Positions 1,998-34,464 of a DNA stretch of 64,000 bases are shown here, piece after piece. A program made the translations under genes and the position numbers. How positions within the stretch are numbered: position 1 is the stretch's first letter; each line of letters starts with the position of its first letter. Under the pieces are notes generated by a model. That model was not told where the DNA came from, searched no databases, and saw nothing but the letters and a program-made list of their open reading frames with translations. This DNA is from Mytilus edulis (Eukaryota). Where the stretch lies: the NCBI RefSeq assembly GCF_963676685.1, contig NC_092351.1, positions 26,288,001 to 26,352,000 on the forward strand. The letters are read 5' to 3'.

Positions 1998-2105
1998 TCA
2001 CACAACACTTTGCTGTTCATGGCAGGAATCTTCTACAAAACTTTTGTGATACAAGCCTGTGTCCCCATTGGGTAACATCCCTACACATACACCACTTTCA
2101 TCATC
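1998..2105 (-). CDS. Last exon: degenerate SH3-4 C-half and PDZ-binding terminus (DDESGVCVGMLPNGDTGLYHKSFVEDSCHEQQSVV*)
   Basis: ATTACAG acceptor, phase 0; G-x-x-x-G...TGLY-x-x-SFVE completes the SH3 fold; TGA at 2000-1998. Confidence 0.82.
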   Translation of the reverse strand, partial: DDESGVCVGMLPNGDTGLYHKSFVEDSCHEQQSVV

Positions 2106-2731
2106 CTGTAATGATAATTTAAATGATTATCTCCAGATGATTATAATATAACATTGGTTGCAACAAAATACTGTTATTTTCCAGTAACATATACACTGAT
2201 TTTATCTCATGTGGAAAAAATCTGATAATTTAACTCCCCCCAATAAGTCATAAGCAAAAGTAGAAATACAAAAATGTATACTTACTTTTTTCTAAATAAA
2301 GGACTAAATTCATTATCAAAATCATGATATTTCTATAAATAGGTCACATTAACATCTGACTCATCATCAGTCATAGTTATAATTTTTCATAAATAAATGC
2401 TGTGAAAACTAAGCAGTTACAACATTCAGTTTGGATCATTATTTTTGTACTCATATTAACTGGACCATGACTTATGAAGGTAGGGCCTGGAAATAGTCCA
2501 CTAACTGATATGAACTGATCAATGATAGTAATGCAACTTCATATTTAATATCAATGATCTATCACAAGTAGTTCCTATCAAAATATCTTAAGCGAAAAAC
2601 TTAACATTGAAAACTGCTATTAATTCAAAGTGTGCTTGACAATGACCTAGTAGGCAGGGCCTGGAAATAGTGGTTAAACAGATATGTACTGATAGAAATG
2701 CAACTTTGTATAACATATGAATGATCTTATA

Positions 2732-3160
2732 TAAATAACACATAGATGAGAGGTTGATAGAGCAGATTGTTACCTTAAGAAAACATTGTCAACCGCGGCA
2801 AAGCTATGTGTTATTTAATTTATTATACTGAATTTTCTATCATTATTGTCTTTTACAGATGAGTTGTATTTAAAAGTATTTTCTATGACGTCACGTACAT
2901 AACAACGTCACAGGTATTAAAAAGATCAACAGAAGTGAAGCAAAATGTTTTATCTTTTATTTTGACAGTCAAATAACAAGATCTGATTCAAAACGTAGAA
3001 CTTAAGCATTGTCTTTAATTACTTGATGTAAATTCAATTCATTGTCCTTGAATAGTAAATTTGATTGGTCTGGACAAGAGGGTGACATTAAAAAAAATTG
3101 TCACCCGCTCAGCCATGTGATAGAATAAATGATCACTCTCTTATTAGCCAACTATAATAT
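2732..3160. mobile_element. Degenerate hairpin-containing non-autonomous element (Crypton-like)
   Basis: TAAATAACACATAG ... CTATGTGTTATTTA inverted pair and a related ATTGTCACCCGC motif near the far end; CpG-richer than its flanks. Confidence 0.4.
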
Positions 3161-3423
3161 GGCATTTTAACATGAATTATAATAACTCACAATAGTTCAT
3201 ATCAAACTAACTTAAGCAAAAAACTTTGTTGATGCCACCAGTGCCGCAGTCATTGCTGGAAAAGCAATCCCTACGTCTTGCTTTTTCTAGAGATTGAGAA
3301 AAAAACCACTTGAATTTAGCAATGACCCATGATTCTAACATTTTGTTATCCACATAAAAGTTGCTGTCAATCAAATTTAATAACAATTAAAACTTAATCT
3401 ATAATTAGTTATAAAGAAGTCAC

Positions 3424-3529
3424 CTGACTAATTTCCTGGATAAAACTTCCTTCTTGGAAAGACAATTCATCTTCATTCTGAGCTGTGTAAGATGTGATAG
3501 CCTTTTTTAGTAAACTTCCTTCATTTTGT
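3424..3529 (-). CDS. SH3 domain 4, N-terminal half (KKAITSYTAQNEDELSFQEGSFIQEISQ)
   Basis: TTTCAG / CAG|GTGACT, phase 2 to 0; YxA-xx-DELSF-xxG SH3 signature. Confidence 0.87.
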
Positions 3530-3916
3530 CTGAAATATGAACAAACTGGTTTTTATAATCATTTATGATGTAAAAAAGATGAAGATGGTTTCAAGTATTA
3601 TATCTTGAATTGTGTGATTAGGGATTACCAACCTGCCCAGACAAACCTATATGTTGGAAGAAATTTTAAAACTTTCATGCTATTTGTATTTCTATTCTTA
3701 GTATAAACATTAGTTTATATAAAGTCCATTGTAAATCTATGATTCCATCTACCTGATTTTTTTTACAATCTGCTTCAACATATGTTTCTGTGAACAAAAC
3801 TGACTTCAATATAAATGGTGGGGTGGGGGTCATAAATGGAGTGAGTTTATGCATCATCTAATGTCAAAGAAAATTAAATGTCTATAGCTACACACAATGC
3901 TAATAAAATAGACAAG

Positions 3917-4160
3917 AACAAGAATGTGTCCATAGTTCACAGCTGCCCCACTGGCACAATTGTTTTCTATGTTCAGTGGATCATGAAATTGGGGTCAAAA
4001 ATCTAATTTGGCATTTTAATTAGAAAGATAATATCATAGGGAACATGTGTATTAACTTTCAAGTTGATTGGACTTCAACATTATTAAAAACTACCTTGAC
4101 CAAAAAATTTAACTTGAAATGGTACAGACGGACGAACAGACCGACCAGAAAACATAGCAC
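3917..4160 (+). mobile_element. Partial HINE/Helentron-type non-autonomous element
   Basis: Highly similar to 28522-28824 (AACAAGAATGTGTCC... GACG microsatellite), 3' hairpin missing. Confidence 0.7.
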
Positions 4161-4482
4161 ATATCATGATATTTTTGTGCTCAATCCCAGTTCAATTGCA
4201 AACTATTTGATAACAAATTTAAAACAATCCATACCATCCAAATGAAGATTTATCATAACTTAATCAATCAGGAAACTAGAAGTAAATCTAAGTGTTTCAC
4301 AAGGAAATGTTTTCTGAAAAACATGTAGCCACTTCAAAAACAATTATTTATATACCTTATCAATGTAAAATACTCTACCATATGAGAACAGAAAGTTAAA
4401 CTGAACACACATTCTAATAATTTTAGAAAAGAAATGTGTTTATATTATTAAGGGAGACCAGAGAAGTTACAAACATTTAACA

Positions 4483-5898
4483 ATGAATAGACGTGATTCA
4501 CAAGTGTCATTATCTTGTGGTGAATGCTGTACAACAAAGAATCTGAAGTACCGCTGTGTTGAGTGTAAAGTTACATTATGTGAAAAGTGCAAGGATTGTC
4601 ATTCTAATTCTCCATCAAATTCAAGTCACATTGTTTTATCCTTTGATTGCATCACCACCAACAATTGTATGGAAAATGAAATTCGAAAAATGCCTTGCAA
4701 GAAACATGGCACAAAAAAATATTCAGTTTTTTGTCAAAATTGCAATTTTCTGATTTGTGCAGATTGCTTTGTTGAAAGCCACTCGTATCATAGAACTATT
4801 AATATAGATGAATTTTTACAGGAGAAGTTTACCATTGGAGAAAGAAGTAGAAAGAAATTTATGAGAAGAATGTCATCTGATGATTCAGGTTTTCTTATCG
4901 TGGATTACCCAGAGGAGAATAGCAATCAGCCCCCTGTCTGGCATTCAGCTGCTGCAGGTTCTTTATTCATGACAAGAACAGTAGAAATTAAACTCATTAA
5001 AACATTCTCGACAAACTTACCAGCAATAGACAGTATAGAAATGGTAAATAAAGATGAAGCATTCATTTGTCATTATGAAGGAGACATCTGTAAAATTAAA
5101 CTAACACCAACAATATTTACCAACAGACTGAAGCAGTTTGATGAAGTAAGAGGTTTAGAACCAGCTGATATAGCTGTTAATTCCGTCGGGGATTTGTATC
5201 TAATATGCAGAGTTGACAAGTCTATAAAACTAGTGAAGAAAAACAGCCACAATAAAACTCAGATATCATCACTTCCCAAACATTTGAACATGGAACCTCT
5301 GTGTATTCACTGTGAGAAGGACAATGATTTACTCATCTGGATAGGGCTTGTTGAATTAGGAGCAAATTTTAAACTATCAAATCATAGCTCTCGTTGTGTG
5401 GTTTCTATACACGCTGATGGAAAATTATGTAATACTTTTGAATATTCCCATATAAATGAAGCACTGTTTACATTTCCATTGCGGATAACATCACATCAGG
5501 GTAGGATTTATGTTATTGACAGAAACAGTCAATCAGCTGGGACAGTCGTAGCACTCACTGAGAATGGCAATATCAAATGGAGGTACAGTGACCTACATCC
5601 AAGTTTCAGTCCAAGACCATTCCTTCCTTCCGATATAGTAGTTACAGAATTCGCAAAAATAATAGTGTTAGATTCAGCTAACAATGCATTCCATATACTT
5701 AACAATGATGGTTATCAAATTTTACACCAATCATTGAAAAGCTTAGAAATAGAATACCCAGTCAGCATGAAGTTTGATGAATCAAACTATTTATGGATTG
5801 GCAGTGGATTTAATGGGGGAACCGAAAATAAAGCTAAACTGAACAAAATTAAAATCACAGGAATAATTATAATAAAAGGTTTCAGTATTTTTCAATGA
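4483..5898 (+). CDS. Nested B-box1/B-box2/NHL-like beta-propeller protein (RING-less TRIM-NHL-like), 471 aa
   Basis: CxxC...CxxC-x4-CxxC-x3-H B-box1; CxxH-x8-CxxC-x4-CxxC-H-xx-H B-box2; C-terminal NHL/propeller-type repeats (FPLRIT..IYVIDR, PSDIVVT..IIVLD); uninterrupted ORF antisense in the intron 3530-7265. Confidence 0.88.
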   Translation: MNRRDSQVSLSCGECCTTKNLKYRCVECKVTLCEKCKDCHSNSPSNSSHIVLSFDCITTNNCMENEIRKMPCKKHGTKKYSVFCQNCNFLICADCFVESHSYHRTINIDEFLQEKFTIGERSRKKFMRRMSSDDSGFLIVDYPEENSNQPPVWHSAAAGSLFMTRTVEIKLIKTFSTNLPAIDSIEMVNKDEAFICHYEGDICKIKLTPTIFTNRLKQFDEVRGLEPADIAVNSVGDLYLICRVDKSIKLVKKNSHNKTQISSLPKHLNMEPLCIHCEKDNDLLIWIGLVELGANFKLSNHSSRCVVSIHADGKLCNTFEYSHINEALFTFPLRITSHQGRIYVIDRNSQSAGTVVALTENGNIKWRYSDLHPSFSPRPFLPSDIVVTEFAKIIVLDSANNAFHILNNDGYQILHQSLKSLEIEYPVSMKFDESNYLWIGSGFNGGTENKAKLNKIKITGIIIIKGFSIFQ

Positions 5899-7265
5899 CT
5901 GGTTAAAGCAAACATTATAACTACTGTATAACTACATGTCAATTATTTATAAAAAAAAATATTACACACTTTTGTTTTATTCTTTCATAATTCTGACTTT
6001 TTTCTTAAACCCAGGCAATTGTATTTAGTACATATATGTATATACAATTTTTCAATACTATAAAATTTGAAATTTTTTTGAGGCAAAGCTGACATGTGAC
6101 AGTCAGTTTTGCTAATCTTTCTATCAAAGCTCCCTGTTATATATAAATATTTTGCCCTATACCTGTAAATAATTCTGCCTTTTATAAAGTTTGGCTTGAA
6201 TAAAACTGGATAAAGGTTACTCATAATTCAGAAAGTATACATTGAGATAATTGCAATTTCAGGAAACCTGCATAGATATATGTGTCAGACAACGCAATGT
6301 AATTTTTTTATTATTGTGACACTGTACTCCCCAAGAAGCATTTTTGGCAATAATAAAAACTTTACAATAATTTCTGCATTTAGTTTTCCAGCTGCATAGT
6401 ATGTTTAATTTCATGACTTCCTTCAAGACAAGTGAATTAACAATGACAAAACAAAAAGTCAGTCTGGAAATTAAAGTTTTTTATGTACTGATTTATCATA
6501 AATGGGAATAAAGCAAACCAGTACAAACAAAAATAATTTTCAGATTTTTTTTATGTTAAAAGTCAAAATAACTGATTCGAGTTATTTCCCTTTTATTATA
6601 AGTTTTCTTTACTAAAAAGCTCCTAAGTTATAACATGTATAGAGAGATTATGTTTGTAAATAACAAAATCAGGTTGAATTAAATGTAAAATGAGATTTAA
6701 AATTCTTAAAAAAAAACAGGAAAGTTTTGGGTTGATTCTGACAGGACAAGAAATTCTGAAATACCAAAATGTATGATTTTAAGGTTTGTCAAAAGGGTAT
6801 TTATAAATTGAAAATTTCGCTGCAAATACATCACAAAATTTATTCAAGCTGTGTACTGGGAAAAGATATAGAAGAGATGATGGTGTCTGAGATTTAGTGT
6901 CTTGAACTTTTAACAGTATAAATATAAGGACATGCGGAATGAATACTGATGAGACAACTATCCACAAAGGTTTTTAATGTTGCAGGCAAGCCATTCTCAA
7001 GATTGAAGCATTTATGTTTTTTTATGATTTGAACAAAATAAGAAATAAACTATTTTGATTTTAAATCAAAGTGCTAATATTAAACCTTAAGTTGTTGGTC
7101 TCGTGTTGGTGTTAGACAACAAAACCTGGCATACTAGATACTAGACTGGTTACATATTGCAGCTAGTTTGGAATAAAATAAGACTGTCTGTGGGCTTGAC
7201 AGTCTTGATTCTATTTCACTAGTGTATGGCACTGAAAAACTGTAACAATCAATAATTCTACCAAC

Positions 7266-9544
7266 CTGTTGTCTCCTGTGTCATTGATCTGTAAGTGACC
7301 ACCCTCTGGTATGCTGCTGTAATTTGGACTAAAGGTAATAGTTTTAGGGCTGTCAGTCACTGGTGAAGTAGGAGGAGTCTTTGGAGGTGGTGGTCTCTTT
7401 GGCTTGGGACTAACTACTCCGTTCATAGCTTTCCGTGGAAGTCTTGAAGGACTGGAAGCAGTTCGTGATGAGCCCATTGGATTTGGAGCTTTCTGTTTGG
7501 GACTTTTAGGGATAGCACTAGAAATTTTACCTCTTTCTTTGGCAGGTTTTTGTTTCTGAAATTTTCTACTCACATTTGGTGAATCTGATAAAGAGCTTTT
7601 TGATTTTTCAACTTTTGGCAGTCTACTTGGAGAGGGACTAGTCATACTGCTATGCCTCACAACATTTGGAGGTCTTGATGGTCTTTCAGGTTTTGATTTA
7701 TTTTCATTTTCACTTTCCTCAACATTTTCAATATGAGTTTTTGTGGTTGGACTAAAGTTTGGCTTAGGAATAGAAGTATTCCCATGTAATTGTTTGTTTT
7801 TTACCGCAGGACTAGTCATTCTCTTTGGAATATTGCTCTGATATGAATGTGCAGGTCCAGGAATTGAAGAAGTTTTGGGACCATTGTCTTGTGATGGTCT
7901 GTTTTCTGAAACATTTTTTGGACCTGAAACAGAACTTTCTTCTGTAGCATCACAAGCCAATGACCCAGAAATATCAGCCATCTTTTGATCACTATCTTCA
8001 CTTATATGAGCATTTTCCAAACCATTTTCCTGTATATGATTATCAATTTCAGTTCCTTTATTTTCAATAATCTCATTTGTAGATTTTTGTTCATTATTCA
8101 ACTCAGGATCATTAAAACTCCTATCTATTGAATTAATAGAGTTCTTTTGATTTGGCACAATGTATTTTTTGTCTATTTTACTATAAATTGGACTCAGTGG
8201 CCTTTGGTAAAAACTGATTTTATCTGGGCCATCTACTACATCTTCACCTACTAAACTGGTCCCAACCTCACTATAGCCTGGTTCCCCATCGTAATGAGAG
8301 TTTACGTAATTTTTATTTGGTTTTGGAGCCACTGGTGGAGGCTTTGGTCCATCGCATCTCAAACTTTGTGATTTTGGTATAAAAGTTGGTTTAGGTGAAT
8401 CATCCCTCATGCTATGTGATTTGGGTTGGGGCAGTTTACAAGGTAATCGACTGTCAGATTTATGACTGGGTTTTTGATTACCAACATGATGATCCAGTAT
8501 ATCACCATTAATTGTCAGCATAGCACCACTATGTTCCACAGAAGGCTCACAAATTACATTTTGATTTCCAATTGAAGCACTAATTTCATCTGACTGACTA
8601 TTGTCCATAGAATTCTGTCTGTTCACTAACTGTCTAGAATCATTCATATCAGACATGTTGATTGCAGACACACTTGTCAGTTCAGATTGATCATGAGTTC
8701 TGTCTCCTTGCACACTACTAGACAAACTAGTTAATCCTGATATTTTACCTAAACTTGTGTCAGTTGTTGCAGTATTCTCTAAGAAACTAGTCACATTTTG
8801 AGTATCATCTGGTAAAATAGCACTGTCATTGTTATCATTGTGAGATTCATTTCCTGTTTCATTTGCATATTTTATATTACTAGTATCAACATCAGTCTGA
8901 GATACGTTTGGAGTAGAATTAACATCTTTTAAATCTGGATACACGCTGTTGGCTTTTTCCTGACGAATCATATATTTTTCTTTCAATAATTTTGGTGGGT
9001 CAGGCCGAGGAGGTGGTGGTGACCTAACCTTTCTTCGACATAACTCAGATTCATTACCAGCTTTCGTTTTTGTTTTAGGCACTTTACATAATTTTGGCTT
9101 TATATATCTTTTTGGCACTTCTGGTTTTCCATTCTGACTGTTGTTTTTGCTTACACTATTACTAACCTTAGTTTTATTAAATTTCTCCATTAAATTTGTT
9201 TTTGATTCGGGTGTTGAATGATGTTGAGTTGGCGGAGGTGGAGCAGGCCTTGATGGCCTCACTGACTTAGGAAGTTTACTCCTTTTGTTAGGAGAATCTT
9301 TTGATAAACCATTTGAGACTTTTGTCCTTTGATCCAGAGACTCTGTTGATTTCTGTGAGATTTCATCCTCAGATCTGTGACCACCAAGTGGTTTGATGGG
9401 TGATAATGCGGCTATATCCTTGTCAATTGTAGTTTCTAAAGGTACATCATGAATCACAATCTTATCTGGTATATCATCATGAGTTATCTCCTCTTCTTGA
9501 GTTACATCCCTTGAAACAGGACCATCTATTTCATCTGCAGTCAT
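7266..9544 (-). CDS. Large exon: ~760-aa disordered Pro/Ser/Lys-rich region
   Basis: ORF 7211..9544 starts immediately after a TTTCAG acceptor (phase 0); donor AG|GTTGGT at 7265 (phase 2); many PxxP motifs. Confidence 0.88.
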
Positions 9545-10959: not shown

Positions 10960-11262
10960 AATAAGCATATTCACCTGCGGAAAAAGGATATTCACCGCGC
11001 ATAACGTCGCGTGCTTTTACCTGCACTATTTTGGTAAAAAAACGATTGATGTACAATTGGTTTTGGTTAATAATTGCCATTACATACATTTCTCTCGGAA
11101 TATGGAATAAAACAATTACTGTCTTTTGTTTCGGTAAATATGTGGTTTAATTGACTTTTGAAAAACTGATATTCACTTCGGCCGTTGGCCTAAGTGAATA
11201 TCAGTTTTTCAAAAGTCAATAAAATTACACATTTACCTCATCAAAAGACAGTAATTGTATAT
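10960..11262. mobile_element. Long-hairpin non-autonomous element (Crypton-like)
   Basis: Foldback 11112-11258 with a perfect 29-bp inner stem (11150-11178 / 11192-11220) around CGGCCGTTGGCCT. Confidence 0.6.
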
Positions 11263-11432
11263 TATCTTATTTTATATTATGTAACAATATGCATTGTATA
11301 TTACGTACACAACAAAAAGCATGCAGTTAACTAAACTCAAAAGATCATCCCCTATCAAAGGGACACAACTGTGAACATTAACCTCTACAGTAGAGGTAGA
11401 AAACTAAAAACACTTTGAGAACACAAAATCAC

Positions 11433-11450
11433 CTGGTCTTGTCTAATAGC
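11433..11450 (-). CDS. Candidate 18-nt microexon (AIRQDQ)
   Basis: ATATTTACAG acceptor, CAG|GTGATT donor, phase 0-0; extends the SH3-3 end to YVE-AI, matching the usual YVExI ending. Confidence 0.55.
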
Positions 11451-14166: not shown

Positions 14167-14321
14167 CTCAACATAAGAGCCAGGAAACCATCCAAACTGG
14201 TCGTCATAGCAACCATACCACCATCCATTGTCCAATGTCTGACATACTATAATGGTGTCACCAATGTCAAATGACAAATCCGTCTCGTTTTCTGCAGCGT
14301 AGGGACAGACAGCTGTATGTT
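14167..14321 (-). CDS. Exon encoding SH3 domain 3
   Basis: HTAVCPYAAENETDLSFDIGDTIIV...GWWYG...FGWFPGSYVE; TTTACAG / GAG|GTGAGG, phase 1 to 0. Missed by the ORF track (<60 aa). Confidence 0.93.
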
Positions 14322-15694: not shown

Positions 15695-15791
15695 CCACTC
15701 CAATATATTCAGCTGTACTCAGATCATTGTTACAGACTGGTAGTTGATCATATACGCTCTGTTTGTCTTTATAACCCAATGGTTCTTCATT
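15695..15791 (-). CDS. Linker exon with Tyr motifs (NEEPLGYKDKQSVYDQLP...AEYIGV)
   Basis: GTACAG / GTGG|GTAAGG, phase 0 to 1. Confidence 0.82.
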
Positions 15792-16845: not shown

Positions 16846-17027
16846 CTGTGAGATTTCTTGTACATATATAGCAGGGAACATTCCAATTTCTTCAGATTTG
16901 TTCTTCCTTCCTTTCATCCAGCCATTCATATCTCTCTCAATACCAATAACAACATCCCCCACATCTAACTGAAGTTCGTTGGAGAAGTTTGGCTCATGGC
17001 TATATAACGCATAAAAACTTCTTCCTC
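16846..17027 (-). CDS. Exon encoding SH3 domain 2
   Basis: FYALYSHEPNFSNELQLDVGDVV...GWMKG...GMFPAIYVQ; TTTGCAG / CAG|GTATTT, phase 1 to 0. Confidence 0.93.
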
Positions 17028-22559: not shown

Positions 22560-24170
22560 CGGTTGACATTTTCCATGATGACTATTGCTATGACTATGAG
22601 GAATATGATATGGTAAAAAGTTAAGTTTTTACTTTAAAAACAAAATGATATGGTAAGGTTAGGTTACTAGTTGACTAACCACCAACCTTGCCTTAGATTG
22701 ATTGATTGTTGGTGCTTAATCTTGTCTTAGACAACCTTTCTATAATTAGACCAAAATTGTATGGTTAATTACGGTTACTTGTTGACTTACCTATGAATTC
22801 CGTATGACCGGGCAATGACTAGCAAGAAATGACTTGGTAAAGTAAGTCTACTAGTTGACTTACCTACATTTTCTGTGACCTTGAGGAATATGACTTGGTG
22901 AGGTAGGTTGATTTTTTGACTTACCTACATTTTCTGTGACCTTGAGGAATATGACTTGGTGAGGTAGGTGGATTTTTTGACTTACCTACATTTTCTGTGA
23001 CCTTGAGGAATGACCTTAATGACCTTGCCATAACTATGACGAATATGACTTGGTGAGGTAGGTTTGCTAGTTGACTTACCCACATTTTCTGAGATGACCT
23101 TGCCAAAACTATGAGGAATATGACTTGGTGAGGTAGGTTTACTAGTTGACTTACCTACATTTTCTGTAATGACCTTGTCGTAACTATGATGAATATGAGG
23201 TAGGTTTGCTTTTGACTAACCTACACTTTCTGAAATGACCTTGCTAAAACTATGAGAAATATGAAGTTGACTAGTTGACTTACATACATTCTTGATGACC
23301 TTGCCAAAACTATAAGAAGTATGACTTGGTGAGGTAGGTTGACTATTTGACTTACCTATATTTTCTGTGATGACCTTGCCATAACTATGAAGAATATGAC
23401 TTGGTGAGTGATAGATTGACTAGTTGACTTATCTGCATTTCTGTGATGACCTTGCCATGACTAGGAGGAATATTACTTCGTGAAGACGGTTGACTAGTTG
23501 ACTTACCTACATTTTCTGCAATGACCTTGCCTTAACTACGATTAATATGACTTGGCAAGGTAGGTTGACCAGTTGACTTACCTACATTTTCTGTAATGTC
23601 TACTAATGACCTTGCCGTAACTATGATGAATATGACTTGATGAGGTAGGTTTGCTAGTTGACTTATCTTCATTTTCTGAGATGACCTTGCCATGACTAGG
23701 AGGAATATGACTTGGTGAGGTAGGTATATTAGTTGACTTACCTACATTTTCTGTGATGATCCTGCCATTACTACCAGGAATATGACTTGGTGAGGTAGGT
23801 TTGCTAGTTGACTTACCCACATTTTCTGAAATGACCTTGCCAAAACTATGAGGAATATGAAGTTGACCAGTTGACTTACATACATTCTGTAATGACCTTG
23901 CAAAAACTATGAGAAATATGAATTGATGAGGTAGGTTGACTATTTGACTTACCTAGATTTTCTGTGATGACCTTGCAATAACTATGAAGAATATGACTTG
24001 GTAAGTAATTGATTGACTAGTTGACTTACCTACATTTTCTGTGATGACCTTGCCATGACTAGGAGGAATATTACTTCATGAGGACGGTTGACTACTTGAC
24101 TTACCTACATTTTCTGTAATAACCTTGCCAAAACTATGAGGAATATGACTTGGTGAGGTAGGTTTACTTG
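22560..24170 (-). repeat. ~75-bp tandem array (~20 units) derived from the exon 3' end plus donor site
   Basis: Unit ...CCTACCTCACCAAGTCATATTCCTCATAG..GGCAAGGTCAT.ACAGAAAATGTAG|GTAAGTCAACTAG on the minus strand; donors 75 bp apart (24104/24029). Confidence 0.95.
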
Positions 24171-24240
24171 CTGGTGGACTTTGAAATGGCGATGATGTAG
24201 GTGTCGGAACTTTTGGTATAGATACTTCCTTCCCTAAAGC
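24105..24240 (-). CDS. Pro/Ser-rich linker exon (ALGKEVSIPKVPTPTSSPFQSPPASKPTSPSHIPHSFGKVITENV)
   Basis: TTTTAG acceptor at 24241, GTAG|GTAAGT donor at 24104, phase 0 to 1 matching the SH3-2 exon. Confidence 0.8.
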
Positions 24241-24815: not shown

Positions 24816-24952
24816 CTTTTTATCGTATGAGAAGACTGGTGCACTGTTTCTGTTCAGGGAAGATTTGGCTAGCTTTGGTGTTAGATCCTGGTTCTTTAGG
24901 AAGGAACTGACAGGAGAGTGTCCATTAGGTAAATGAAGGTTAGATGTGTACA
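24816..24952 (-). CDS. Linker exon (VYTSNLHLPNG...FSYDKK)
   Basis: TTTACAG / AAG|GTAACA, phase 1 to 0, open frame. Confidence 0.8.
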
Positions 24953-25838: not shown

Positions 25839-26018
25839 CTTTGCCTATATCAGTTTCCTCCACATAGCTTCCAGGGAACCAGCCTTCTTTATCCTTTATC
25901 CTGCCCTTCCACCACCCATTTCCTCTCTTTTCTATCAAGGTCACAACATCACCAAGGTCAAGATTAAGTTGGCTGTCTTCCTGGGCTGTGTATGGGTACA
26001 GTACATGGTATAGTACAT
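25839..26018 (-). CDS. Exon encoding SH3 domain 1
   Basis: YHVLYPYTAQEDSQLNLDLGDVVTL...GWWKG...EGWFPGSYVE is a canonical SH3 pattern; TTTCAG / AAAG|GTTAGG, phase 1 to 1. Confidence 0.93.
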
Positions 26019-27050
26019 CTGAAATCAAATTTTACAAACTGTGATGACTATTGGATTGACAATTATTTTGTATTCTCTATAAAGAATAAATACATGTGCC
26101 ATTAATTTTACCTCAACTAATTTATTATAGTTGGAAAAGAATGAACATTTTTTGATTGTTTAAGTTGCAATGCCTATTAAAGACCTTCTTCTTTATGTTT
26201 TGTTGTTTTCAAAAAATAGTTCACTAACAGTAGTTTAATGTAGCTCATTCAATGTCAATGCCCTCAGTTCATTTTGTATCAAACAATCAAACATAAGAAG
26301 CATATGGCATATGGTCCAGAGACCTTTACCCTTAAACTGTAAAATTCAAAATATCTACTAGGAATTAGAATTGGAAAACTTTTTGTAAAACCTTATAAAA
26401 GACCAAAGAATCTGGAACAAAAATTAAAAAGAAGTTCACCTGCAAGTTAAAAAATTAAATCAGTGATATAAATCATTATGGACAACAGTTACAAAATATT
26501 GTGTATTCATTATCTATCTAAGGCATCAGGCCCTGGGTCATGGACATCACACATTAAAGAAAATAATTAGTATAATATATTGTCACACCTAAGGCATTAA
26601 CAAGTTTTTAAATATTGCTTAAAATGAACAGAAAATAATGGTTTGAAACAAAAGTCATAAAAGCAGCTTAATAAAACCAAATGTTTGTCAAATGTAAAAA
26701 GCTGCAAGACAAAAAGCTCTGGGAACCATTTTTTTTTAGATGTATATAATAATCACTGTATATCTGGAAAAAAGAACTTCCTTGAGATGTAATATTTTAA
26801 GAAGTACCGGTACAGATTTCATCGTGGATTGAGATCAGATTACAAAAAATACCCTGAAAAAACTTCTTATATTACATCAAAGGCATCACAATATGTGTTT
26901 TGCAATACCCTTTGTTAAAAGTTGCCAAGTGTTTCTAGTGATCAAATCAAAAACATGGAAAACATGAAATTACACTTGTGAGAGAACTTTGTTTATAAAG
27001 TGTAAGCATACCTCCTAATCAATACACAAATGAAATCAACATTTACTTAC

Positions 27051-27194
27051 CATAGGCGGATCCGAAAAAAAAAAAATGGGAAAAAATTGGTTGATTATAT
27101 AGAGAATCATTGAAGCATGACTGGAGCGGGCCCCCCCTTAGGTCAGTCAGCGACCCCCCCCTCCCCCTTAGGAAAAGTTCTGGATCCGCCACTG
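27051..27194. mobile_element. hAT-like MITE, 5-bp TSD subfamily
   Basis: CATAGGCGGATCC ... GGATCCGCCACTG ends flanked by CTTAC on both sides. Confidence 0.8.
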
Positions 27195-28521
27195 CTTACA
27201 CATTAAAGATAACCAGCATCGTTCAATTATCTATTAAGAATTCTTATCTTTTGTCAAAAAGTAATTTTAGAGTTACATGTAAGAAGAATAACAAATTAAA
27301 ACATGAAAATTAGACTTAAACCTGCCCCTTTTTCTAATGTGAAACATATATATGTTTATATATATGTTACAAGAATTTCCACTGCTTAATTCTTAACCCT
27401 TGTCATCGGCAGATTAAATGATTAAAAAGTATGTTAAAAGATTTGATTAGTGCCATTATCCAAAGCAACTGTTTACAATAAATTAAAGAAGAATATTTGA
27501 CAATTACTTGAGTCAGCTATGATCACATAGTATGAAGAACAGCCTTATGTTCAATCAAATCATAATCTTGCTAAACACATGTAAAGATGATAAATTGTAA
27601 ATATTTCTTGGTAACATACTTTCTTACAATTAGCAGGCAGTAAATTGTTCAAAGATAACTGGTTTTCATTAATTTAACATAAAACGCAATATTCTCAAAG
27701 CTGACATATGAACATTGCTTTCCTGGAAATTTTCTGCTATTTAATTTGTAATGATGATCTAGTAATACAGGTGCTTTAAAATCAGTGAGTCATGGGGGTC
27801 TGTTATTGTTATACTAATGATACTATCTAAAACCTGAATCAGAGGGGTAGAGAGAGTGGTTCTTCTCCAATGGTGAACTCTAGGAAGTAAATCATTAGTT
27901 TAAATATTCCCTTGCACATATTCCCTAAGGTTTCAATTTGGACAGATTATATACATTAGCAAGAAGAGGAATTACACCAGTGAATGTCATGTGATAGAAG
28001 TACCAGCAGCTCCAGACTTAGAACTAGGAAAGGAGAGCATTTAAAAAAGAAGATTTGGTATAACTGCCAATGAGACAACTCTCAACAAGAGACCAAACGA
28101 CACAGAAATTGACAATTATAGGTTACCATACGGCCTTCAACAATGAGCAAAGCCCATGTCTGACACTGATAAAAAAGAGAGAAATAGTCTTGGCAGCTCA
28201 GGTACAGATGAGTTTTGATATATATATTGTGTCGTTTCGGAACTGATATATAATATAATTGAAATTTTCATTTATATTATATATCAGTTCCTATAATCTG
28301 TAATGAAAAATCATCTTTGTTTTCTAAAAATAAAATCATAGCTTTATATATTGATTGATTATTACTAAAAAAGAACTATTCACCAGACACAAAAATGATG
28401 CAAATATAATCAACTATAGTTCGTTATACATCCTTTATAAGAAGAAGCAAAAGACTTATTAAAAAAATATCTAATATGAAGCTATAACAGACCCAGATAT
28501 GGCAAAAGGTAAAATCGAATA

Positions 28522-28824
28522 AACAAGAATGTGTCCTCAGTACACGAATGCCCCACTCGCACTATCATTTTTCTATGTTCAGTGGACCGTGAAATTGGGG
28601 TAAAATCTCTAATTTGGCATTAAAATTAGAAAGATCATATCATAGGGAACATGTGTACCAAGTTTGAAGTCGATTGGACTTCAACTTCATAAAAAACTAC
28701 CTCGACCAAAAACTTTAACCTGAAGCGGGACAGACGGACGAACGGACGAACGAATGGACGGACGAACGGACGCACAGACCAGAAAACATAATGCCCCTCT
28801 ACTATCGTAGGTGGGGCATAAAAA
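28522..28824 (+). mobile_element. Complete short HINE/Helentron-type element
   Basis: AACAAGAATGTGTCC start, ATGCCCC sub-terminal repeat, GGAC/GAAC microsatellite, terminal hairpin ATGCCCC-TCTAC..GTAG-GTGGGGCAT. Confidence 0.8.
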
Positions 28825-30901
28825 GAAAATCAATGGCCTGATTTATGACAAAAATTTAATTGAAAAACAAAAATATCAAATAGCAACCAATGGCTACTTT
28901 AATCACAACCCTTTAGTATTGGGATAGGTACATAAAAAATATGGCAGGAGCCTGGTTAATCATGTTATTTCATATTATACCTAATATAACTAAGCAAACA
29001 CCAAAGTTGTACAAATACACCAAAACTAATAATGAACTAAAAGTATATTGTATTCATAAACTGGTTACTATTGGTCTGTTTTTGTATTCTAGTGACTGCT
29101 TTACAAAATGTCAAATTAGACTTTAGAGTTCTTCTCAATGTTAAATTATGGTAAATATGGTGGACCTCCATACATCCCTAATTTTTGTTTTTCAGTATTT
29201 GGATTTCTGTGTAATCTTTTATAAACTGATGTTTGTCTTTATATCATTTTGCTTTTGGCCATAGTAATTGTCTTCCACTTCTGATTTTTTGGTACCTCTT
29301 CCATGTTTCCTCCCATTTTATCAAATTCAAAGACACAAAAAATGCTTCATTACAATATTACTTCCTGTTTAGAGTTAAAATTATTGTTTTGTTCATCTTT
29401 GAGCTTCAGTATTTGTGTGTGTTCTTCTGCATGAAAAAACAAACTTTATTGACTTGTATACTATGCAAAATTAAATAAATTTGTACTTAAATATTTTTGA
29501 TAAGGAAATGTGCTATAAATCTATTTTCTCTATGATACAGTATGTATATCTGTCTTAGTAAATCTGATGAATAATTCTGATTTAAATAAAAGATAAAAAT
29601 AAGATGTATGATTTCCCTTGATATTGAACATGGTGAAAGGAAATTCCACAAACAACAAAAGCACTTTAGATTATCAAATCAGATCAGATTTTACTTTCCC
29701 AGACATAAAATGGAATGATTTCAATAATGTTAATACCACCATGTCGTTTATTTCAAAGATAGATTCTGGCAAGTTTTCTAAAATGATTTGGCATACTGTG
29801 TCTTCACTAAGTCTCTGGTAGTGCTTATTTTATCTGGGGGTGTATATAAATTTACCAACTGCTATTTTAATAACAGAATGAAAATGACAAAGGAATTAAG
29901 AAAATTTAGAATTTAAAAAGTTTATTATGTAATACATTTTATTCAAATGATCATAGAGTTTGATGACATAACAATACATGTTTGACGTTGCGGATAAATA
30001 AAATGAGATATGGAGTATATATCAATTAGACAGCAACCCAACAAAGGAAATAACTGAATGCATTAATGAGCTACTTGTTACAAGGTCACTGTAAAAAACA
30101 AATAAAACCTAAAATGACAGGAACAACCTTTCTATCCTCACTTAGCAACTAAAACCTTCAATGCAATATTAAGAATTGTTCTTGCAAATTAGAATATCAG
30201 TTTTTTTTCATTGAAAATGCACCAAAAACATTATAAAAGTATGATAAACCCTCCTTAAAAGATTAATAACACAAGTATTTGTTAACTTATGTAAGTGCCA
30301 ATAACTTAATTTGTTCATTACAATTAGGTTTCAACAAGACTTTGCTCAGAGCTTTGCTCTAAGTATAGGAATTTATGAAAACTTTAAAGTAGAAAAGAAT
30401 TTTCAACAAATCAAATAGAAGTTAAATGTAATTTCTTTTTTATCCCTAGAGTGAAACCTGTGATCCCCTCTGGAGCACAGAAAAATCACTTTCAAATGTA
30501 ATTTCAAAATACATAGAAATAATTATTACATAGGGAAAAAGACAATGACCCTAGAAGACAGGTTTTTCCTTAAATGAGGTGACCTTTTTAGCAGGTTCAA
30601 TTGTACTTAATATGACATGTTTATCAATTTCACCAATATTTGTAATGTTTCCTCAATATTTCCATCATATCTAATCCTATAAACAATGTTTTTTTAAGAC
30701 CTGTCACTTTGATGGGTGTAAATAATGAGATGTATATTTAATACGATTGACCTGAATAACATGTCAATTTGACTGATAGAAAATAATAAAAAGTATAATA
30801 ATTAATGCAAATAAAATAAATAAATGTGACACTAAAAATTAAAGCAGAATAAATAGCATCTGAAAAAAAATAACAAATTCAACAACAACATATTTTTATA
30901 C

Positions 30902-30931
30902 CTATTCTATACTTCTTTTTTCCAGACCAAC
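30902..30931 (-). CDS. Candidate 30-nt microexon (GWSGKKKYRI)
   Basis: TTTTTACTTCAG acceptor, ATAG|GTATAA donor, symmetric phase 1-1, no stop, fits between exon 3 and the SH3-1 exon. Confidence 0.6.
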   Translation of the reverse strand, partial: VGLEKRSIE

Positions 30932-31416
30932 CTGAAGTAAAAACAACTTAAAAATGTTGTGCTCTCAATTAATTGTTTAAGAGTACCAAGTACAAAAAAA
31001 AAGACCAGACAATTATACTGATCAATACTGTAATATGACTCCTAAATAGATAAAGTTACTCTTTTTAGTATATTGTGTCCCTAAGTGATTTTTTTTTGCA
31101 GTACAGACATTCAACCATCACTGAAAACAATTATTGGATTCATAAATGCCATGGTATTTCGTTCAATTTAAAAAATATGGATTTCAAAAGATTGATTGTA
31201 CATGTATGAACTTTGTTAATTTAAAAAACAGAAAGTTACTTCCCTTTTCTCTTCAATTTTGAAAGATCAAATGAAATATTCAAACTATCTTTTTAATCAT
31301 ATTATCCATATTCATTGTTATCATGAAATCAAATATCCACAGGCTTTGGTCAACCATATTTAAACATATGCCTTATACTGGAAATATCAGACAAATATCA
31401 ACATTTAGGGTAATAC

Positions 31417-31552
31417 CTTTACTGGTTTTGGTCTGAACCTTTGGTGATTCTGATACTGTATCTAGTACTGAGTCAAATGTTGGTGCATAAGATATATCTC
31501 CTCTGTTACTGGCCCAAAGGTCTCCGATCTGTACGGTTTCTATGGTTTGTTG
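31417..31552 (-). CDS. Coding exon 3: juxtamembrane cytoplasmic segment (QQTIETVQIGDLW...TKTSK)
   Basis: TTTCAG acceptor, AAAG|GTATTA donor, phase 0 to 1; part of ORF 31373..31627. Confidence 0.8.
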
Positions 31553-32460
31553 CTGAAATATGTTGTAAATGAAAGTTAATAAGGTCACGCTTTTAAGATA
31601 GTTATCTCCCTTGTTTAAAGTATCCAATTTTACAGTTAAAGTTTAGGTCATACTTATGTGATAACCTAATTAAAATATATCATGCACACTGCACAGTATG
31701 TCTTTTATGCAACAAAGTTTAACTAGTGCGTTTTTTTTGGGGTGTCTGTTGATATGAAATAATTCTATTTATCAGAAAATACATCTGGCTTTGATGTAAA
31801 GCAATGTGAATTGTGCTTTTACTTTTGACTCAAATAGTGAACCAATATTTTTTTATGTCTGGGGGGGGGGGGGGAGGATAGGGTTATTTCTTGCAAGAGT
31901 TGAAAAGAGAAAGGTATTTTTTGCTTTCTTGAACATAGAGGAAAACTTATATATTAATATGCAGTAAAGTTATCTTTCTATAAGTTGAACATATTGTTTA
32001 CAAAGTTATTCTTTGATTCATAAAATCAATCAATCAGTGTATAACATTTTAAAGACAAAATGTGATAACTGTATTTGGTACTATGTACCAGGAGTTTGTT
32101 GAAATATTTCTGTCCTAGGAACCAAAAATACATATAGACTACAGCAGTTTCGGCTGTGGTTAACATAATCTGTTAAAATTTATGCATGTTATGTTTCATA
32201 GTAACACCTAGAATTTGTGACCAAAACCAAACCAATTTATTTACTAATTAACTATTCCGCATAAAAGGGTTTATGTTCAATACTCTTTGAGAATGCATGG
32301 AATATACAAAAATTCCATATATGGGTGGCTCCTTAACTTACAAAATTTCTACTCTTGATAATTATTTCAATGCACAGTTGTACCATATTTTAGCTTATCA
32401 AAGTGTCATTTCTACATACATTTATTATACTACACAATTGTATTCCAATTGAATATTTAC

Positions 32461-32576
32461 CTTTGTGCTTGATCTTTTCTTGCAACAGACAAACAAAACT
32501 ATGATTAAAAGAATGAGTAACCCAACTCCACATAATGACATTCCAAGGATTAATGTCAAGTTGTCTGTTAAAGATG
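32461..32576 (-). CDS. Coding exon 2: transmembrane helix (LTLILGMSLCGVGLLILLIIVLFVCC-KKRSSTK)
   Basis: TTTGCAG acceptor, AAG|GTAAAT donor, phase 1 to 0; hydrophobic stretch followed by CC and a basic KKR stop-transfer. Not in the ORF track. Confidence 0.9.
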
Positions 32577-32864
32577 CTGCAAATAATACGAATTTAATTT
32601 AATACAAACTTTGCAGTAATTTTTATATGAATTATTCAATTTTACAAGGTTGACATTTTCAAAAAGCGGAAGATTTCAAATTTTAACGGGAGGGACGGAA
32701 GAGGGTCTAAAAAGCGGGAGATTTTGACTCCCCCCGGAAGAATCACATGTATTCAGAATACAAGAAATTTGTAACTTTTCTCCATTAATGAATGTAATGA
32801 CAATATTTAATTCTGATAAATACAATGTTCATTGAACATGACTGGGTATGAATTATACAATATC

Positions 32865-33159
32865 TAGATATAGGAAGATGTGGTGTGAGTGCCAATGAGA
32901 CAACTCTCCATACAAATAACAATTTAAAAAGTAAACCATTATAGGTTAAAGTATTGTTATTATATTTTTTTCATGTTTAAATGTTATGCTTCATGACCTA
33001 AAGGGACACTTTTTTGGGCCCTTTATAGCTTGCTGTTAGGTGTGAGCCAAGGCTCTGTGTTGAAGATCGTACTTTGACCTATAATGGTTTACTTTTATAA
33101 ATTGTGACTTGGATTGAGATCTATCTCATTGGCACTCATACCACATCTTCTTTTATCTA
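32865..33159. repeat. Head-to-head inverted pair of an abundant interspersed repeat
   Basis: GAAGATGTGGTGTGAGTGCCAATGAGA ... TCTCATTGGCACTCATACCACATCTTC. Confidence 0.8.
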
Positions 33160-33935
33160 CCTATAAAGAATAACAAAATCCAAAATTTTAAAGAGTGCTT
33201 CCAACATAATTTATAACATTTATTAGTTCTATTTCTATTTGTGATAACTCTCAAACCATTTTCAATTCAATTGATTGAAACTTTTCATAATAATTTTATT
33301 AAAATCTATTTAGAACTGTAAGAATGAGGCAAATATTTTTCAAATAGTTAGAATTTTAAAGGGGCTTACATTCAATTGAATTTGGTTTTCAAATTTGATT
33401 GAGACACTTTTAAAATAAGTCTTTTTATGATTCTTATCAAAATCTGTTAAAAATTACAATGATCATACATTCCAAAGAAAATTTCAATCCAACTACTGAA
33501 TTTTGAACTTGATCTAATTATTGTTGCTATAAACCTTTGATGTAAATTTTATCAACATCTGTTCAGAAAAGCAAAGGTGAAAGTCATTACTGAATCAAGA
33601 TTTGTTCATATTATACTATAAAATAAATACATCAAGAACTGTCAAATATAAAACAAACTTTCACATTCTAAACTTTTGGGACTCATTTCTATTCAACTTT
33701 TTGATATTGCCTTTAAACTTTTTTGATTCGAGCTTTACTGATGAGACTTTTGTAGATGAAATGCACCTCTGACACACAAAATTTTGAGCCTGATATCTTT
33801 AATGACTTTTATTTACTAGGTCATGCAGTTAGATGGATGGACAGACACCCATCATAGCTCTTTTCCCCTCTCTTCAATGTATCGGAGGGTGAAAACAGAT
33901 TTTTGAGTTTAAGCAATTACTCTTGTAATACTTAC

Positions 33936-34464
33936 ATGGAGTGGCTGATACACTACCATTGGTGGCAGCAGTGGTTATTGGCAAGAGTGGGGGGATATAT
34001 GAAGAACTAGGATTAACAACTGATGATGACGGGGAAATGTTTGATGTCAATTGCACTGAGTCTATTCCATTTGATTTCACAGGACTTGATGAATGACTAG
34101 AAATTTTGTAGTTTGACGTTTCATATGATCCTCCAACAGAGTTCAGAGGTGGTGTGGCTGAGGTTGATAGTGGTTGAGATGTTGATGATACTGATTGTGA
34201 AATGGCATGATGAACGGTGGAGAAGGCACTATGACTTGATGCTAATGAATCTTGTAGAATAGTCGTGGATGGGACATCATTATGTAGTGTCGCTGACGAC
34301 CCTGAAAGTAATGCTGATGACCTTGAAAGTAATTCTGTTGAAGAATGCTGTGATGATGACATCTCAGATGAAAATGAGGCTGTCAAACTGATAACATCTC
34401 CATGGAACACAGTTTGTGTACTAGTTAATGAACTTGTGTCACTTTCGGTTGCATTAACTGCCAT
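33936..34464 (-). CDS. Coding exon 1: Ser/Thr-rich mucin-like ectodomain (MAVNATESDTSS...SVSATP)
   Basis: ATG at 34464 with an in-frame TAA just upstream; S/T-rich sequence with N-glycosylation sequons (NAT, NIS, NGS); donor T|GTAAGT at 33935, phase 1; likely acceptor TTCAG near 34624 for the 5' UTR part. Confidence 0.8.

What the first reader, a model, noticed from the sequence alone, without database searches (positions are those of the whole stretch)
1998..34464. Membrane-anchored four-SH3 'mucin receptor/adaptor' with an unusual metazoan architecture
Seen: a phase-consistent exon chain giving S/T-rich ectodomain without signal peptide, TM, CC-KKR, SH3 x3, ~760-aa Pro-rich region, degenerate SH3, -QSVV. 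Known: triple-SH3 plus Pro-rich adaptors (CIN85/CD2AP) are cytosolic; palmitoylated type III transmembrane adaptors (LAT/PAG) lack SH3 domains; fungal Fus1 combines an O-glycosylated ectodomain, one TM and one SH3. Inference: this is a hybrid surface sensor/scaffold that I cannot assign to any named animal family. It could couple glycocalyx sensing, adhesion or fusion to actin/endocytic machinery. The ORF track misses the TM, SH3-3 and SH3-4 exons, so automated annotation may split or mislabel the gene.
Basis: partly seen in the sequence, partly recalled or inferred. Interest (0 to 1): 0.8.

Follow-up and report, generated by a model that had tools for sequence, protein, structure and literature searches.

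The report
Membrane-anchored four-SH3 scaffold gene of mussels
This is a real mussel gene for a protein that has a sugar-carrying-type serine-rich outer part, one membrane span and four SH3 docking domains inside the cell; the combination is shared by molluscs and an annelid but has not been studied.

Summary
On the minus strand, 34464 (ATG) to 1998 (stop), 12 constitutive and 2 optional exons, all GT-AG and phase-consistent, encode 1386-1402 aa. Each exon matches a RefSeq Mytilus edulis model, misnamed 'serine-rich adhesin for platelets-like', at 90.6-100% in tblastn; the shortfalls lie where hits run past an exon edge. Pfam finds four SH3 domains and nothing else. The rest is a 176-aa Ser/Thr-rich, Cys-free N-terminus with no signal peptide (in-frame stop 9 nt before the ATG), one TM helix, CC-KKR, a 759-aa Pro/Ser-rich exon with conserved PxxP motifs, and -QSVV. 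Spliced contigs of three RNA-type runs join exon 1 to the TM exon to exon 3 and then run 3.3-4.7 kb further. The junction into the first SH3 exon was not tested directly because of the 6000-letter limit.

The same architecture occurs in pectinids, oyster, three gastropod genera and the annelid Owenia. Two unnamed transcripts are relatives; one carries a Cu/Zn-SOD-like ectodomain and a signal peptide. It belongs to no named SH3 family: no PX, DH/BAR, EH or coiled coil.

Best reading: a type III membrane-tethered multivalent SH3/PxxP scaffold. The function is inferred. An older annotation split the gene. I rate it a new variant of a known kind.

The parts
33936..34464 (-). E1: start codon and 176-aa Ser/Thr-rich (S 29.5%, T 11.4%), Cys-free N-terminal region with 3 N-x-S/T sequons. 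The 5'UTR continues in the same exon to at least 34625, with an in-frame TAA at 34473-34471.
32461..32576 (-). E2: transmembrane helix (SLCGVGLLILLIIVLFVCC) followed by KKRSSTK. Phase 1 in, phase 0 out.
   Evidence: (joints 32576-33936 and 31552-32461)
31417..31552 (-). E3: juxtamembrane cytoplasmic segment carrying the mollusc-conserved DLW motif. It restores the reading phase between the TM exon and SH3-1.
30902..30931 (-). E3b: optional 30-nt micro-exon (GWSGKKKYRI). It is present in RefSeq isoforms of 1396/1402 aa and in contigs of 3 runs.
   Evidence: joint 30929/31-31415/17; short side 28 nt
25839..26018 (-). E4: SH3-1
   Evidence: (SH3_1 2.2e-15)
24816..24952 (-). E5: linker with the conserved (V/I)SSFL motif
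24105..24240 (-). E6: linker with the ALGKEVSIP motif. Its 3' end and donor are the first unit of the 75-nt tandem array at 22855-24168.
16846..17027 (-). E7: SH3-2
   Evidence: (SH3_9 2.9e-10)
15695..15791 (-). E8: linker with the conserved VYxQL motif
14167..14321 (-). E9: SH3-3, the best conserved domain (51-70% identity to the non-Mytilus orthologues)
   Evidence: (SH3_1 6e-13)
11433..11450 (-). E9b: optional 18-nt micro-exon (AIRQDQ)
7266..9544 (-). E10: 759-codon disordered Ser/Pro/Lys-rich exon (P 11%, 18 PxxP). It carries conserved motifs RPxRxAPxPP, KPEVPKRFxKPKLxKVP, SPPPPRPxPP, PPVAPKP and PxRPPPP. Single copy in the genome.
3424..3529 (-). E11: first half of SH3-4
   Evidence: (SH3_1 22.6 bits vs cut-off 22.9)
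1998..2105 (-). E12: second half of SH3-4 (Trp replaced: GVCVG; Pro replaced: GLYH), the C-terminal -QSVV and the stop codon

Best explanation
This is one single-copy gene. It encodes a type III (N-terminus outside, no cleaved signal peptide) single-pass membrane protein.

Architecture:
- A disordered, Cys-free, Ser/Thr-rich and probably glycosylated N-terminal segment is exposed on the outside.
- One TM helix follows, then two juxtamembrane cysteines (palmitoylation candidates) and a basic cluster.
- The cytoplasmic part is a long multivalent scaffold: three SH3 domains, a ~760-aa disordered region with at least five conserved proline motifs, a divergent PACSIN-like fourth SH3, and a C-terminal S-V-V that looks like a PDZ ligand.

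Proposed mechanism (inferred): because SH3 domains and SH3 ligands sit in the same membrane-tethered chain, the protein can fold back on itself or cross-link with neighbours. It could thereby recruit proline-rich or SH3-bearing actin and endocytic proteins to the membrane. This is the job that cytosolic adaptors (CIN85/CD2AP, Tks4/5) do after being recruited, but here the anchor is built in.

Shown: gene structure, splicing of E1-E2-E3, domains, conservation.
Inferred: topology, glycosylation, palmitoylation, binding partners, cellular role.
For: Gene model:
- All 12 constitutive exons match RefSeq M. edulis XP_071125566 (P0018) at 90.6-100% in tblastn, 7 of 12 at 100%.
- Splice sites and phases were read.

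RNA:
- In 3 of 3 RNA-type contig runs (X1, X4, X10, from three studies), joints lie at 32576/33936 and 31552/32461 with CT..AC ends. That is GT..AG on the minus strand.
- Intron bins have depth 0.
- One 5582-nt contig (X1) and one 4524-nt contig (X10) carry E1+E2+E3 and then 4.7 and 3.3 kb that lie outside the stretch laid. About 3.4 kb of CDS is expected downstream.

No signal peptide:
- An in-frame TAA lies 9 nt upstream of the ATG, inside the contig-covered exon.
- The first 35 residues have no hydrophobic core (maximum KD 1.32).

Topology:
- The C-side flank of the TM holds 4-8 K/R in 12 of 12 family proteins. The N-side holds 0-2.
- Relative P0048 has a signal peptide and three Cu/Zn-SOD stretches on the N-side.

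Domains and structure:
- Pfam finds four SH3 domains.
- The AlphaFold2 model of the Patella orthologue gives a disordered residue range 1-218, a helix at 219-245 and four SH3 barrels with 10-residue block mean pLDDT of about 80-93. The rest is mostly below 50.

Conservation:
- A single TM was found in 18 of 20 family proteins examined.
- Four SH3 were found in 10 of 15.
- Proline motifs and linker motifs are conserved across bivalves, gastropods and Owenia.
- SH3 domains are 36-70% identical to the non-Mytilus orthologues, against 8-26% for the ectodomain.
- SH3-4 aligns end to end with PACSIN SH3 (43 bits).
Against: - The E3/E3b-to-E4 junction, the only link between the TM part and the SH3 part, was not seen directly in M. 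edulis RNA. It rests on contig lengths, RefSeq models and orthologues.
- The raw RNA-seq run X24 had depth 0 on E1-E3, so expression is not universal.
- Twelve oyster-type transcript ORFs (P0028-P0039, 1072-1084 aa; one stands for 692 sequences) came up. The three I fetched (P0028, P0029, P0038) begin just after the TM position. This could mean a TM-less isoform or only a contig break.
- Translocating a 176-776-aa N-terminus without a signal peptide is unusual.
- Glycosylation, palmitoylation, surface location and all partners are untested.
- The Pinctada model lacks the TM.
- Juxtamembrane Cys is absent in the 2 Patella proteins (10 of 12 have it).
- In Mytilus, SH3-4 has lost the ligand-binding Trp and the conserved Pro, so it may not bind PxxP.
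Confidence: 0.72

Rival explanations
1. The model is a chimera. A small mucin-like TM gene (E1-E3) and a separate cytosolic multi-SH3 adaptor gene (E4-E12) were fused by gene prediction.
For: An older M. edulis annotation has exactly this split: CAG2229784 (298 aa, E1-E3 then read-through) and CAG2229786 (1148 aa, from E4). The fetched oyster transcript ORFs start after the TM position.
Against: The contigs with E1-E2-E3 do not run on into the intron (depth 0 at 30982-31375). They continue for 3.3-4.7 kb elsewhere, which matches the downstream CDS. E3 ends in phase 1 at a GT donor and E4 needs phase 1. RefSeq models in four Mytilus species, and models in pectinids, oyster, gastropods and Owenia, place TM and SH3 in one protein. 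The unnamed transcripts P0048 and P0049 carry TM and SH3 in one ORF.
Confidence: 0.04
2. It is a diverged orthologue of a named cytosolic multi-SH3 adaptor (Tks4/5, CIN85/CD2AP, DNMBP/Tuba, intersectin or SH3D19) that gained an N-terminal anchor. The family is then old and only the anchor is new.
For: The layout of three SH3, a long proline-rich linker and a C-terminal SH3 resembles Tks4 (recalled). The next hits after the orthologues are intersectins, CIN85 and DNMBP. One Mytilus model is named 'dynamin-binding protein-like'.
Against: Pfam finds no PX, DH, BAR, EH, PH or C2. In a tree of 63 SH3 domains, none of the family's SH3 groups joins the SH3s of intersectin, CIN85, DNMBP or SORBS1 (only 54 columns, many forks open). 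The apparent top rank of p47phox sums two domains. Per domain it scores 39.6 bits, below myosin IB at 59 and nostrin at 53. Tks, p47phox and PACSIN sequences could not be put in the tree.
Confidence: 0.1
3. The protein is membrane-anchored but sits on internal membranes (ER, Golgi or endosomes). Alternatively the Ser/Thr-rich N-terminus stays in the cytosol, for example as a phosphorylated disordered region. In either case it is not a surface molecule.
For: There is no signal peptide. N-terminal segments of 176-776 aa are long for signal-anchor translocation. No tool here predicts localisation.
Against: Charge asymmetry across the TM is uniform in 12 of 12 proteins. The N-side has no Cys in 14 of the 17 proteins with an N-side of 9 residues or more. 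It carries N-x-S/T sequons, one of them at residue 4. Relative P0048 has a signal peptide and SOD-like domains with 16 Cys on that side.
Confidence: 0.14

Closest known systems
Tks4/Tks5 (SH3PXD2B/A) organiser adaptors
   Same: They are membrane-targeted multi-SH3 scaffolds with long disordered proline-rich linkers and an SH3 at the very C-terminus (recalled). The likely mode of action is the same: bringing SH3/PxxP partners to the membrane.
   Different: Tks proteins reach the membrane through a PX domain. This protein has no PX and has a TM helix and an outside segment instead.
CIN85 / CD2AP
   Same: Both have three SH3 domains followed by a proline-rich region and act as endocytic/actin adaptors (recalled; PMC10453029, passages seen).
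   Different: CIN85/CD2AP are cytosolic and end in a coiled coil. This protein ends in an SH3 plus -QSVV and has a TM. Its SH3s do not group with an amphipod CIN85.
Transmembrane adaptor proteins LAT, PAG, LIME (TRAPs)
   Same: Both show type III topology without a signal peptide, juxtamembrane cysteines next to the TM, and a long disordered cytoplasmic tail used as a scaffold (abstracts of PMC2213442 and PMC2194117 in search listings).
   Different: TRAPs have very short outside parts (16 aa in PAG) and no folded domains, and they work through phosphotyrosine motifs. This protein has a 176-aa or longer outside segment and four SH3 domains.
Yeast Fus1
   Same: Both combine an O-glycosylated N-terminal outside part, one TM and a cytoplasmic SH3 (recalled; the abstract of PMC2063912 in a search listing calls it a raft-associated transmembrane protein).
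   Different: Fus1 is fungal, has one SH3 and lacks the long proline-rich region. Homology was not tested because no Fus1 sequence was in hand.
PACSIN/syndapin SH3 domain
   Same: SH3-4 aligns over 52-57 residues with PACSIN1-3 SH3 (E 2.8e-10, 43 bits). These are the best solved matches.
   Different: There is no F-BAR domain. In Mytilus the conserved Trp and Pro are replaced (GVCVG, GLYH), while other molluscs keep the Trp.
Bacterial SraP ('serine-rich adhesin for platelets'), the RefSeq name
   Same: Only the serine-rich composition is shared.
   Different: Pfam matches nothing but SH3. The gene is a spliced animal gene, so the name is a low-complexity artefact.

Membership tests
Tks4/5 (SH3PXD2) | N-terminal PX domain | tested here: not met
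   Pfam gives no PX hit on the exons or on P0008. A scan of all six frames of the window with three recalled PX-like patterns gave one irrelevant hit on the + strand.
Tks4/5 (SH3PXD2) | Several SH3 domains, long proline-rich linkers and a C-terminal SH3 | tested here: met
   Four SH3 at residues 274-326, 426-480, 516-568 and 1340-1394 of P0018. The 759-aa linker holds 18 PxxP.
CIN85/CD2AP | C-terminal coiled coil | tested here: not met
   The C-terminus is an SH3 domain. The model of orthologue P0042 shows strands 963-1018 and only a 6-residue helix after them. No coiled-coil predictor was run.
CIN85/CD2AP | SH3 domains orthologous to CIN85 SH3-A/B/C | tested here: inconclusive
   The two SH3 of an amphipod CIN85 group with DNMBP and SORBS1 SH3s, not with this family. 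The tree has 54 columns and 27 of 60 forks are open.
DNMBP (Tuba) | DH and BAR domains | tested here: not met
   Pfam lists only SH3 families for P0008, while the DNMBP hits carry PF00621 and PF03114.
Intersectin | EH domains and a DH-PH-C2 module | tested here: not met
   None is found in P0008, whereas the intersectin hits carry them. The intersectin SH3s form their own clades.
Transmembrane adaptor proteins (LAT/PAG type) | No signal peptide, one TM and juxtamembrane cysteines | tested here: met
   In-frame stop before the ATG. One TM at residues 190-208. CC directly before KKR, and juxtamembrane Cys in 10 of 12 family proteins. Palmitoylation itself cannot be tested here.
Transmembrane adaptor proteins (LAT/PAG type) | Very short ectodomain and a tail without folded domains | tested here: not met
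   Among the 12 full-length models, the N-side is 182-776 aa. There are four SH3 domains.
p47phox / NOXO1 | PX domain plus closely spaced tandem SH3 | tested here: not met
   There is no PX. SH3-1 and SH3-2 are about 100 residues apart. The per-domain score to p47phox SH3-A is only 39.6 bits. Molluscs are reported to have their own p47phox-like gene (PMC2121648, abstract and passages).
Fus1-like (fungal) | Sequence homology to Fus1 | not tested
   No Fus1 sequence was available from any call. The resemblance is one of architecture only.
SraP-type serine-rich adhesin | Bacterial serine-rich repeat adhesin domains and cell-wall anchor | tested here: not met
   No Pfam family other than SH3. The gene has 13 introns that are spliced in RNA-type contigs.

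The most novel reading that the evidence does not exclude
This is an undescribed animal family of type III 'mucin-SH3' membrane proteins, a receptor and a multivalent SH3/PxxP adaptor in one chain. It is conserved across molluscs and annelids. The outside module is exchangeable: Ser/Thr-rich in molluscs, and Cu/Zn-SOD-like with a signal peptide in the unnamed relative P0048. Clustering of the outside part would then directly drive condensation of an actin/endocytic SH3 network, with no kinase or separate adaptor needed.
Probability: 0.25. Interest if true: 0.7.

Novelty: new variant of a known kind. Interest (0 to 1): 0.5.

Why it matters
In the animal systems that have been studied, SH3 scaffolds are cytosolic and must be recruited to receptors. 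Transmembrane adaptors, by contrast, carry motifs but no SH3 domains. A conserved protein that fuses both parts would be a simple, kinase-independent way to couple the cell surface to actin or endocytosis in molluscs and annelids. It would also be a natural test case for membrane-tethered multivalent SH3/PxxP assembly.

In practical terms, the family carries several misleading database names, and one older annotation splits it. Expression studies in bivalves are therefore likely to misreport it.

Tried and rejected
1. p47phox/NADPH-oxidase organiser link. Searches ranked p47phox first for SH3-1 and SH3-3. One search showed that the 69 bits are the sum of two SH3 domains of one chain (39.6 + 27.8). 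Myosin IB (59) and nostrin (53) score higher per domain, so I dropped the idea.

2. PX exons upstream. I found none in the window. The patterns used were recalled, so this is weak evidence.

3. An alternative acceptor for SH3-3, which I considered in order to repair the phase. It proved unnecessary once E8 was found.

4. The 75-nt array at 22855-24168 as coding sequence. Its frames break and only its first unit is in E6. An older model does use later units.

5. Wider relatives. One search (P0049) found only intersectins and SORBS1. The Atlas searches returned only the family's own mollusc cluster (0.89 and 0.87, leads only).

6. Literature. Six searches found no description of a TM plus multi-SH3 animal family. 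The ten papers that contain the RefSeq name were seen only as a listing. The supplements of PMC10453029 (domain charts of the 221 human SH3 proteins) are closed and could list a TM-bearing case that I did not see.

7. Rfam found nothing in 32600-35700.

8. The AlphaFold model is of the Patella orthologue, not the mussel protein, because the mussel proteins exceed 1200 aa. I could not inspect contacts between motifs and SH3 domains.

Full report
**What is in the sequence**

- a 198-aa Ser/Thr-rich frame at 34470-33877
- a hydrophobic stretch followed by CCKKR at 32598-32428
- three frames with SH3-like sequence near 26000, 17000 and 14300
- a 782-aa frame at 9559-7214
- two short frames that together look like a fourth SH3 and end in QSVV before the stop at 2000-1998

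Pfam on the single exons gives SH3_1 or SH3_9 for the three full domains, at E 2e-15, 3e-10 and 6e-13. The first half of the fourth scores just under the cut-off, 22.6 against 22.9 bits. The Ser/Thr-rich exon and the long exon match nothing.

**Gene model**

Reading the splice sites, I first found that the TM exon ends in phase 0 while the SH3-1 exon needs phase 1. At least one more exon therefore had to lie between them.

A search of 1.84 billion representative proteins with the long exon returned 4 proteins. One of them, P0008, is 1386 aa and 99% identical, with the exon at residues 554-1319. Its cluster of 12 members holds these entries:
- RefSeq Mytilus edulis isoforms X1-X6, 1386-1402 aa, named 'serine-rich adhesin for platelets-like'
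- M. galloprovincialis 'uncharacterized protein LOC143085470'
- M. trossulus 'dynamin-binding protein-like'
- an older M. edulis annotation that splits the gene into 298-aa and 1148-aa products

tblastn of isoform X1 (P0018) against the window places all 12 constitutive exons at 90.6-100% identity. Seven of the 12 are at 100%. Five hits, at 90.6-97.9%, run past an exon edge.

With the sequence around each exon, the boundaries are as listed under parts. The two optional micro-exons, of 30 and 18 nt, were found by peptide search. All 13 introns are GT-AG and all phases fit. The exon lengths add to 4209 nt, which is 1402 codons plus the stop.

The long exon is single-copy in the assembly: 1 match in 1.37 Gb.

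**Transcript evidence**

One read-laying run was available, with at most 6000 letters.

I laid 29800-35700 (E1, E2, E3, E3b and the 5' flank) for two reasons. The fetched oyster ORFs begin just after the TM position, which cast doubt on the TM-to-E3 link. This stretch would also reveal any alternative first exon.

Result:
- In 3 of 3 RNA-type contig runs from three studies, joints lie exactly at 32576/33936 and 31552/32461 with CT..AC ends.
- A third joint lies at 30929(+2)/31415(+2), into the micro-exon. Its short side is 28 nt because the exon is only 30 nt, so it is weaker.
- Intron bins have depth 0, so these contigs are spliced RNA.
- X1 holds a 5582-nt contig with E1 (positions 1-580), E2 (581-696) and E3 (697-834), and then about 4.7 kb that lie on nothing in the stretch.
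- X10 holds a 4524-nt contig with the same three exons and about 3.3 kb more. The CDS downstream of E3b is 3.4 kb.
- No other joint enters E3, so no alternative first exon was seen within the stretch.
- The raw RNA-seq run X24 had depth 0 on these exons.

The E3/E3b-to-E4 junction itself stays unverified in M. edulis RNA.

**Protein features**

*N-terminus.* The ATG at 34464 is preceded by an in-frame TAA 9 nt upstream, in the same transcribed exon. An upstream signal peptide is therefore excluded for these transcripts. The first 35 residues have no hydrophobic core. The 176-aa N-terminal exon is 29.5% Ser and 11.4% Thr, has no Cys, and carries sequons at N4, N142 and N169.

*Membrane span.* A single hydrophobic span lies at residues 190-208 (mean KD 3.03). 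Its last two residues are CC, and KKRSSTK follows directly.

*Long exon.* It is 14% Ser, 11% Pro and 9.5% Lys, and holds 18 PxxP.

*SH3-4.* It aligns end to end with PACSIN SH3 domains (43 bits). In Mytilus, Val stands where the ligand-binding Trp is expected, and His where the conserved Pro is expected. 'Degenerate' is a fair description.

**Relatives**

A search with residues 170-553 of P0008 found 34 proteins. Orthologues with E values from 1e-247 to 1e-40 come from:
- M. californianus
- four pectinids
- Pinctada
- Magallana
- Gigantopelta, two Patella species and Littorina
- the annelid Owenia

After these the list drops to intersectins, CIN85 and DNMBP.

Findings across the family:
- Of 20 family proteins examined, 18 have exactly one TM. 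The exceptions are the Pinctada model and an oyster-type ORF that starts after the TM position.
- The N-side is 32-42% Ser+Thr in the eleven full-length mollusc and annelid models. It is Cys-free in 14 of the 17 proteins with an N-side of 9 residues or more.
- The C-side flank of the TM holds 4-8 K/R in 12 of 12, against 0-2 on the N-side. Juxtamembrane Cys occurs in 10 of 12.
- Four SH3 are found in 10 of 15. Four models end early with three SH3, and one unnamed protein has a single SH3.
- A C-terminal S/T-x-V/L occurs in 7 of 12.
- Conserved linker motifs are (V/I)SSFL, ALGKEVSxP, VYxQL and IEHxA.
- Conserved proline motifs are PxRKAPxPP, PxRxAPAPP, KPEVPKRFxKPKLxKVP, SPPPPRPxPP, PPVAPKP and PxRPPPPxSPP. 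They are shared from bivalves to Owenia.
- Against the non-Mytilus orthologues, the SH3 domains are the best conserved parts (36-70% identity). The ectodomain (8-26%) and the long region (9-20%) keep mainly composition and motifs.

Two unnamed transcript-type proteins belong with the family. Their SH3-4 is sister to the molluscan SH3-4 (95/95), and their SH3-1 groups with the mussel SH3-1 (98/80). One of them, P0048, has a signal peptide, three Cu/Zn-SOD stretches (E 1.8e-37), a Ser/Thr stretch, a TM with CC-KKR and four SH3. This supports the N-out reading.

The AlphaFold2 model of the Patella orthologue (mean pLDDT 48) gives a disordered N-side, one helix at 219-245 and four confident SH3 barrels. 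It also gives a few medium-confidence segments at the conserved proline and basic motifs.

**Comparison with known families**

No PX, DH, BAR, EH, PH or C2 domain is present, and no coiled-coil end. It is therefore not a member of Tks, DNMBP, intersectin or CIN85/CD2AP.

In the SH3 tree, none of its domains joins the SH3 clades of those families that I could include. Resolution is low, and Tks, p47phox and PACSIN were not available.

The p47phox lead was an artefact of summing two domains.

By architecture, the nearest analogues are Tks4/5 (membrane-targeted multi-SH3), LAT/PAG-type transmembrane adaptors, and yeast Fus1. A review of the 221 human SH3 proteins mentions no single-pass surface SH3 protein in the passages I read (PMC10453029). 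Its supplement was not visible. Six literature searches found no description of this family.

**Verdict**

The gene is real, single-copy and transcribed with the TM exon. It belongs to a conserved family of molluscs and at least one annelid.

It is already present as a full-length RefSeq prediction, under misleading names, so the gene model itself is not new. What appears undescribed is the family and its design: a built-in membrane anchor and outside segment on a multivalent SH3/PxxP scaffold. The function is inferred, not shown.

Noticed in passing
window 4483-5898 (+): An intronless 471-aa ORF with a B-box zinc finger (PF00643, 8e-11) and a weak NHL repeat hit. It is a TRIM-NHL-like gene nested on the opposite strand, inside the intron between E10 and E11.
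   Followed up: partly
window 22855-24168: A 75-nt tandem array (about 12 to 18 units) that starts at the 3' end of exon E6 and repeats the exon end plus a GTAAGT donor. An older annotation (P0015) uses a later donor and adds three units in frame. RefSeq isoforms do not.
   Followed up: partly
window 32860-33164 (intron 1): A hairpin-like inverted repeat of about 305 nt (71-nt arms at 82%, inner 27-nt arms at 96%). Summed depth is about 10,000 in RNA-type contigs, and 20-45 reads on both strands in raw RNA-seq. It looks like a multicopy MITE-type element. There is no Rfam match.
   Followed up: partly
window 35119-35700: A second multicopy stretch upstream of the gene, present in RNA (depth 500-2000 in contigs, about 12 in raw reads). 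It carries many fixed differences from the window.
   Followed up: no
protein P0048 (unnamed transcript-type contig): A relative of the family with a signal peptide and three Cu/Zn superoxide dismutase-like stretches outside. After these come the same TM, CC-KKR, three SH3, proline-rich region and C-terminal SH3.
   Followed up: partly
proteins P0028-P0039 (oyster-type transcript ORFs): Twelve ORFs of 1072-1084 aa, one standing for 692 sequences. The three I fetched (P0028, P0029, P0038) begin just after the position of the TM and DLW motif of the Magallana model. This is either a TM-less isoform or a contig break at a splice branch.
   Followed up: no
window 51800-52480 (-): A 226-aa ORF made of tandem TSSTAFQC(F/S/L)IHTC units. 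It is probably a minisatellite rather than a gene.
   Followed up: no
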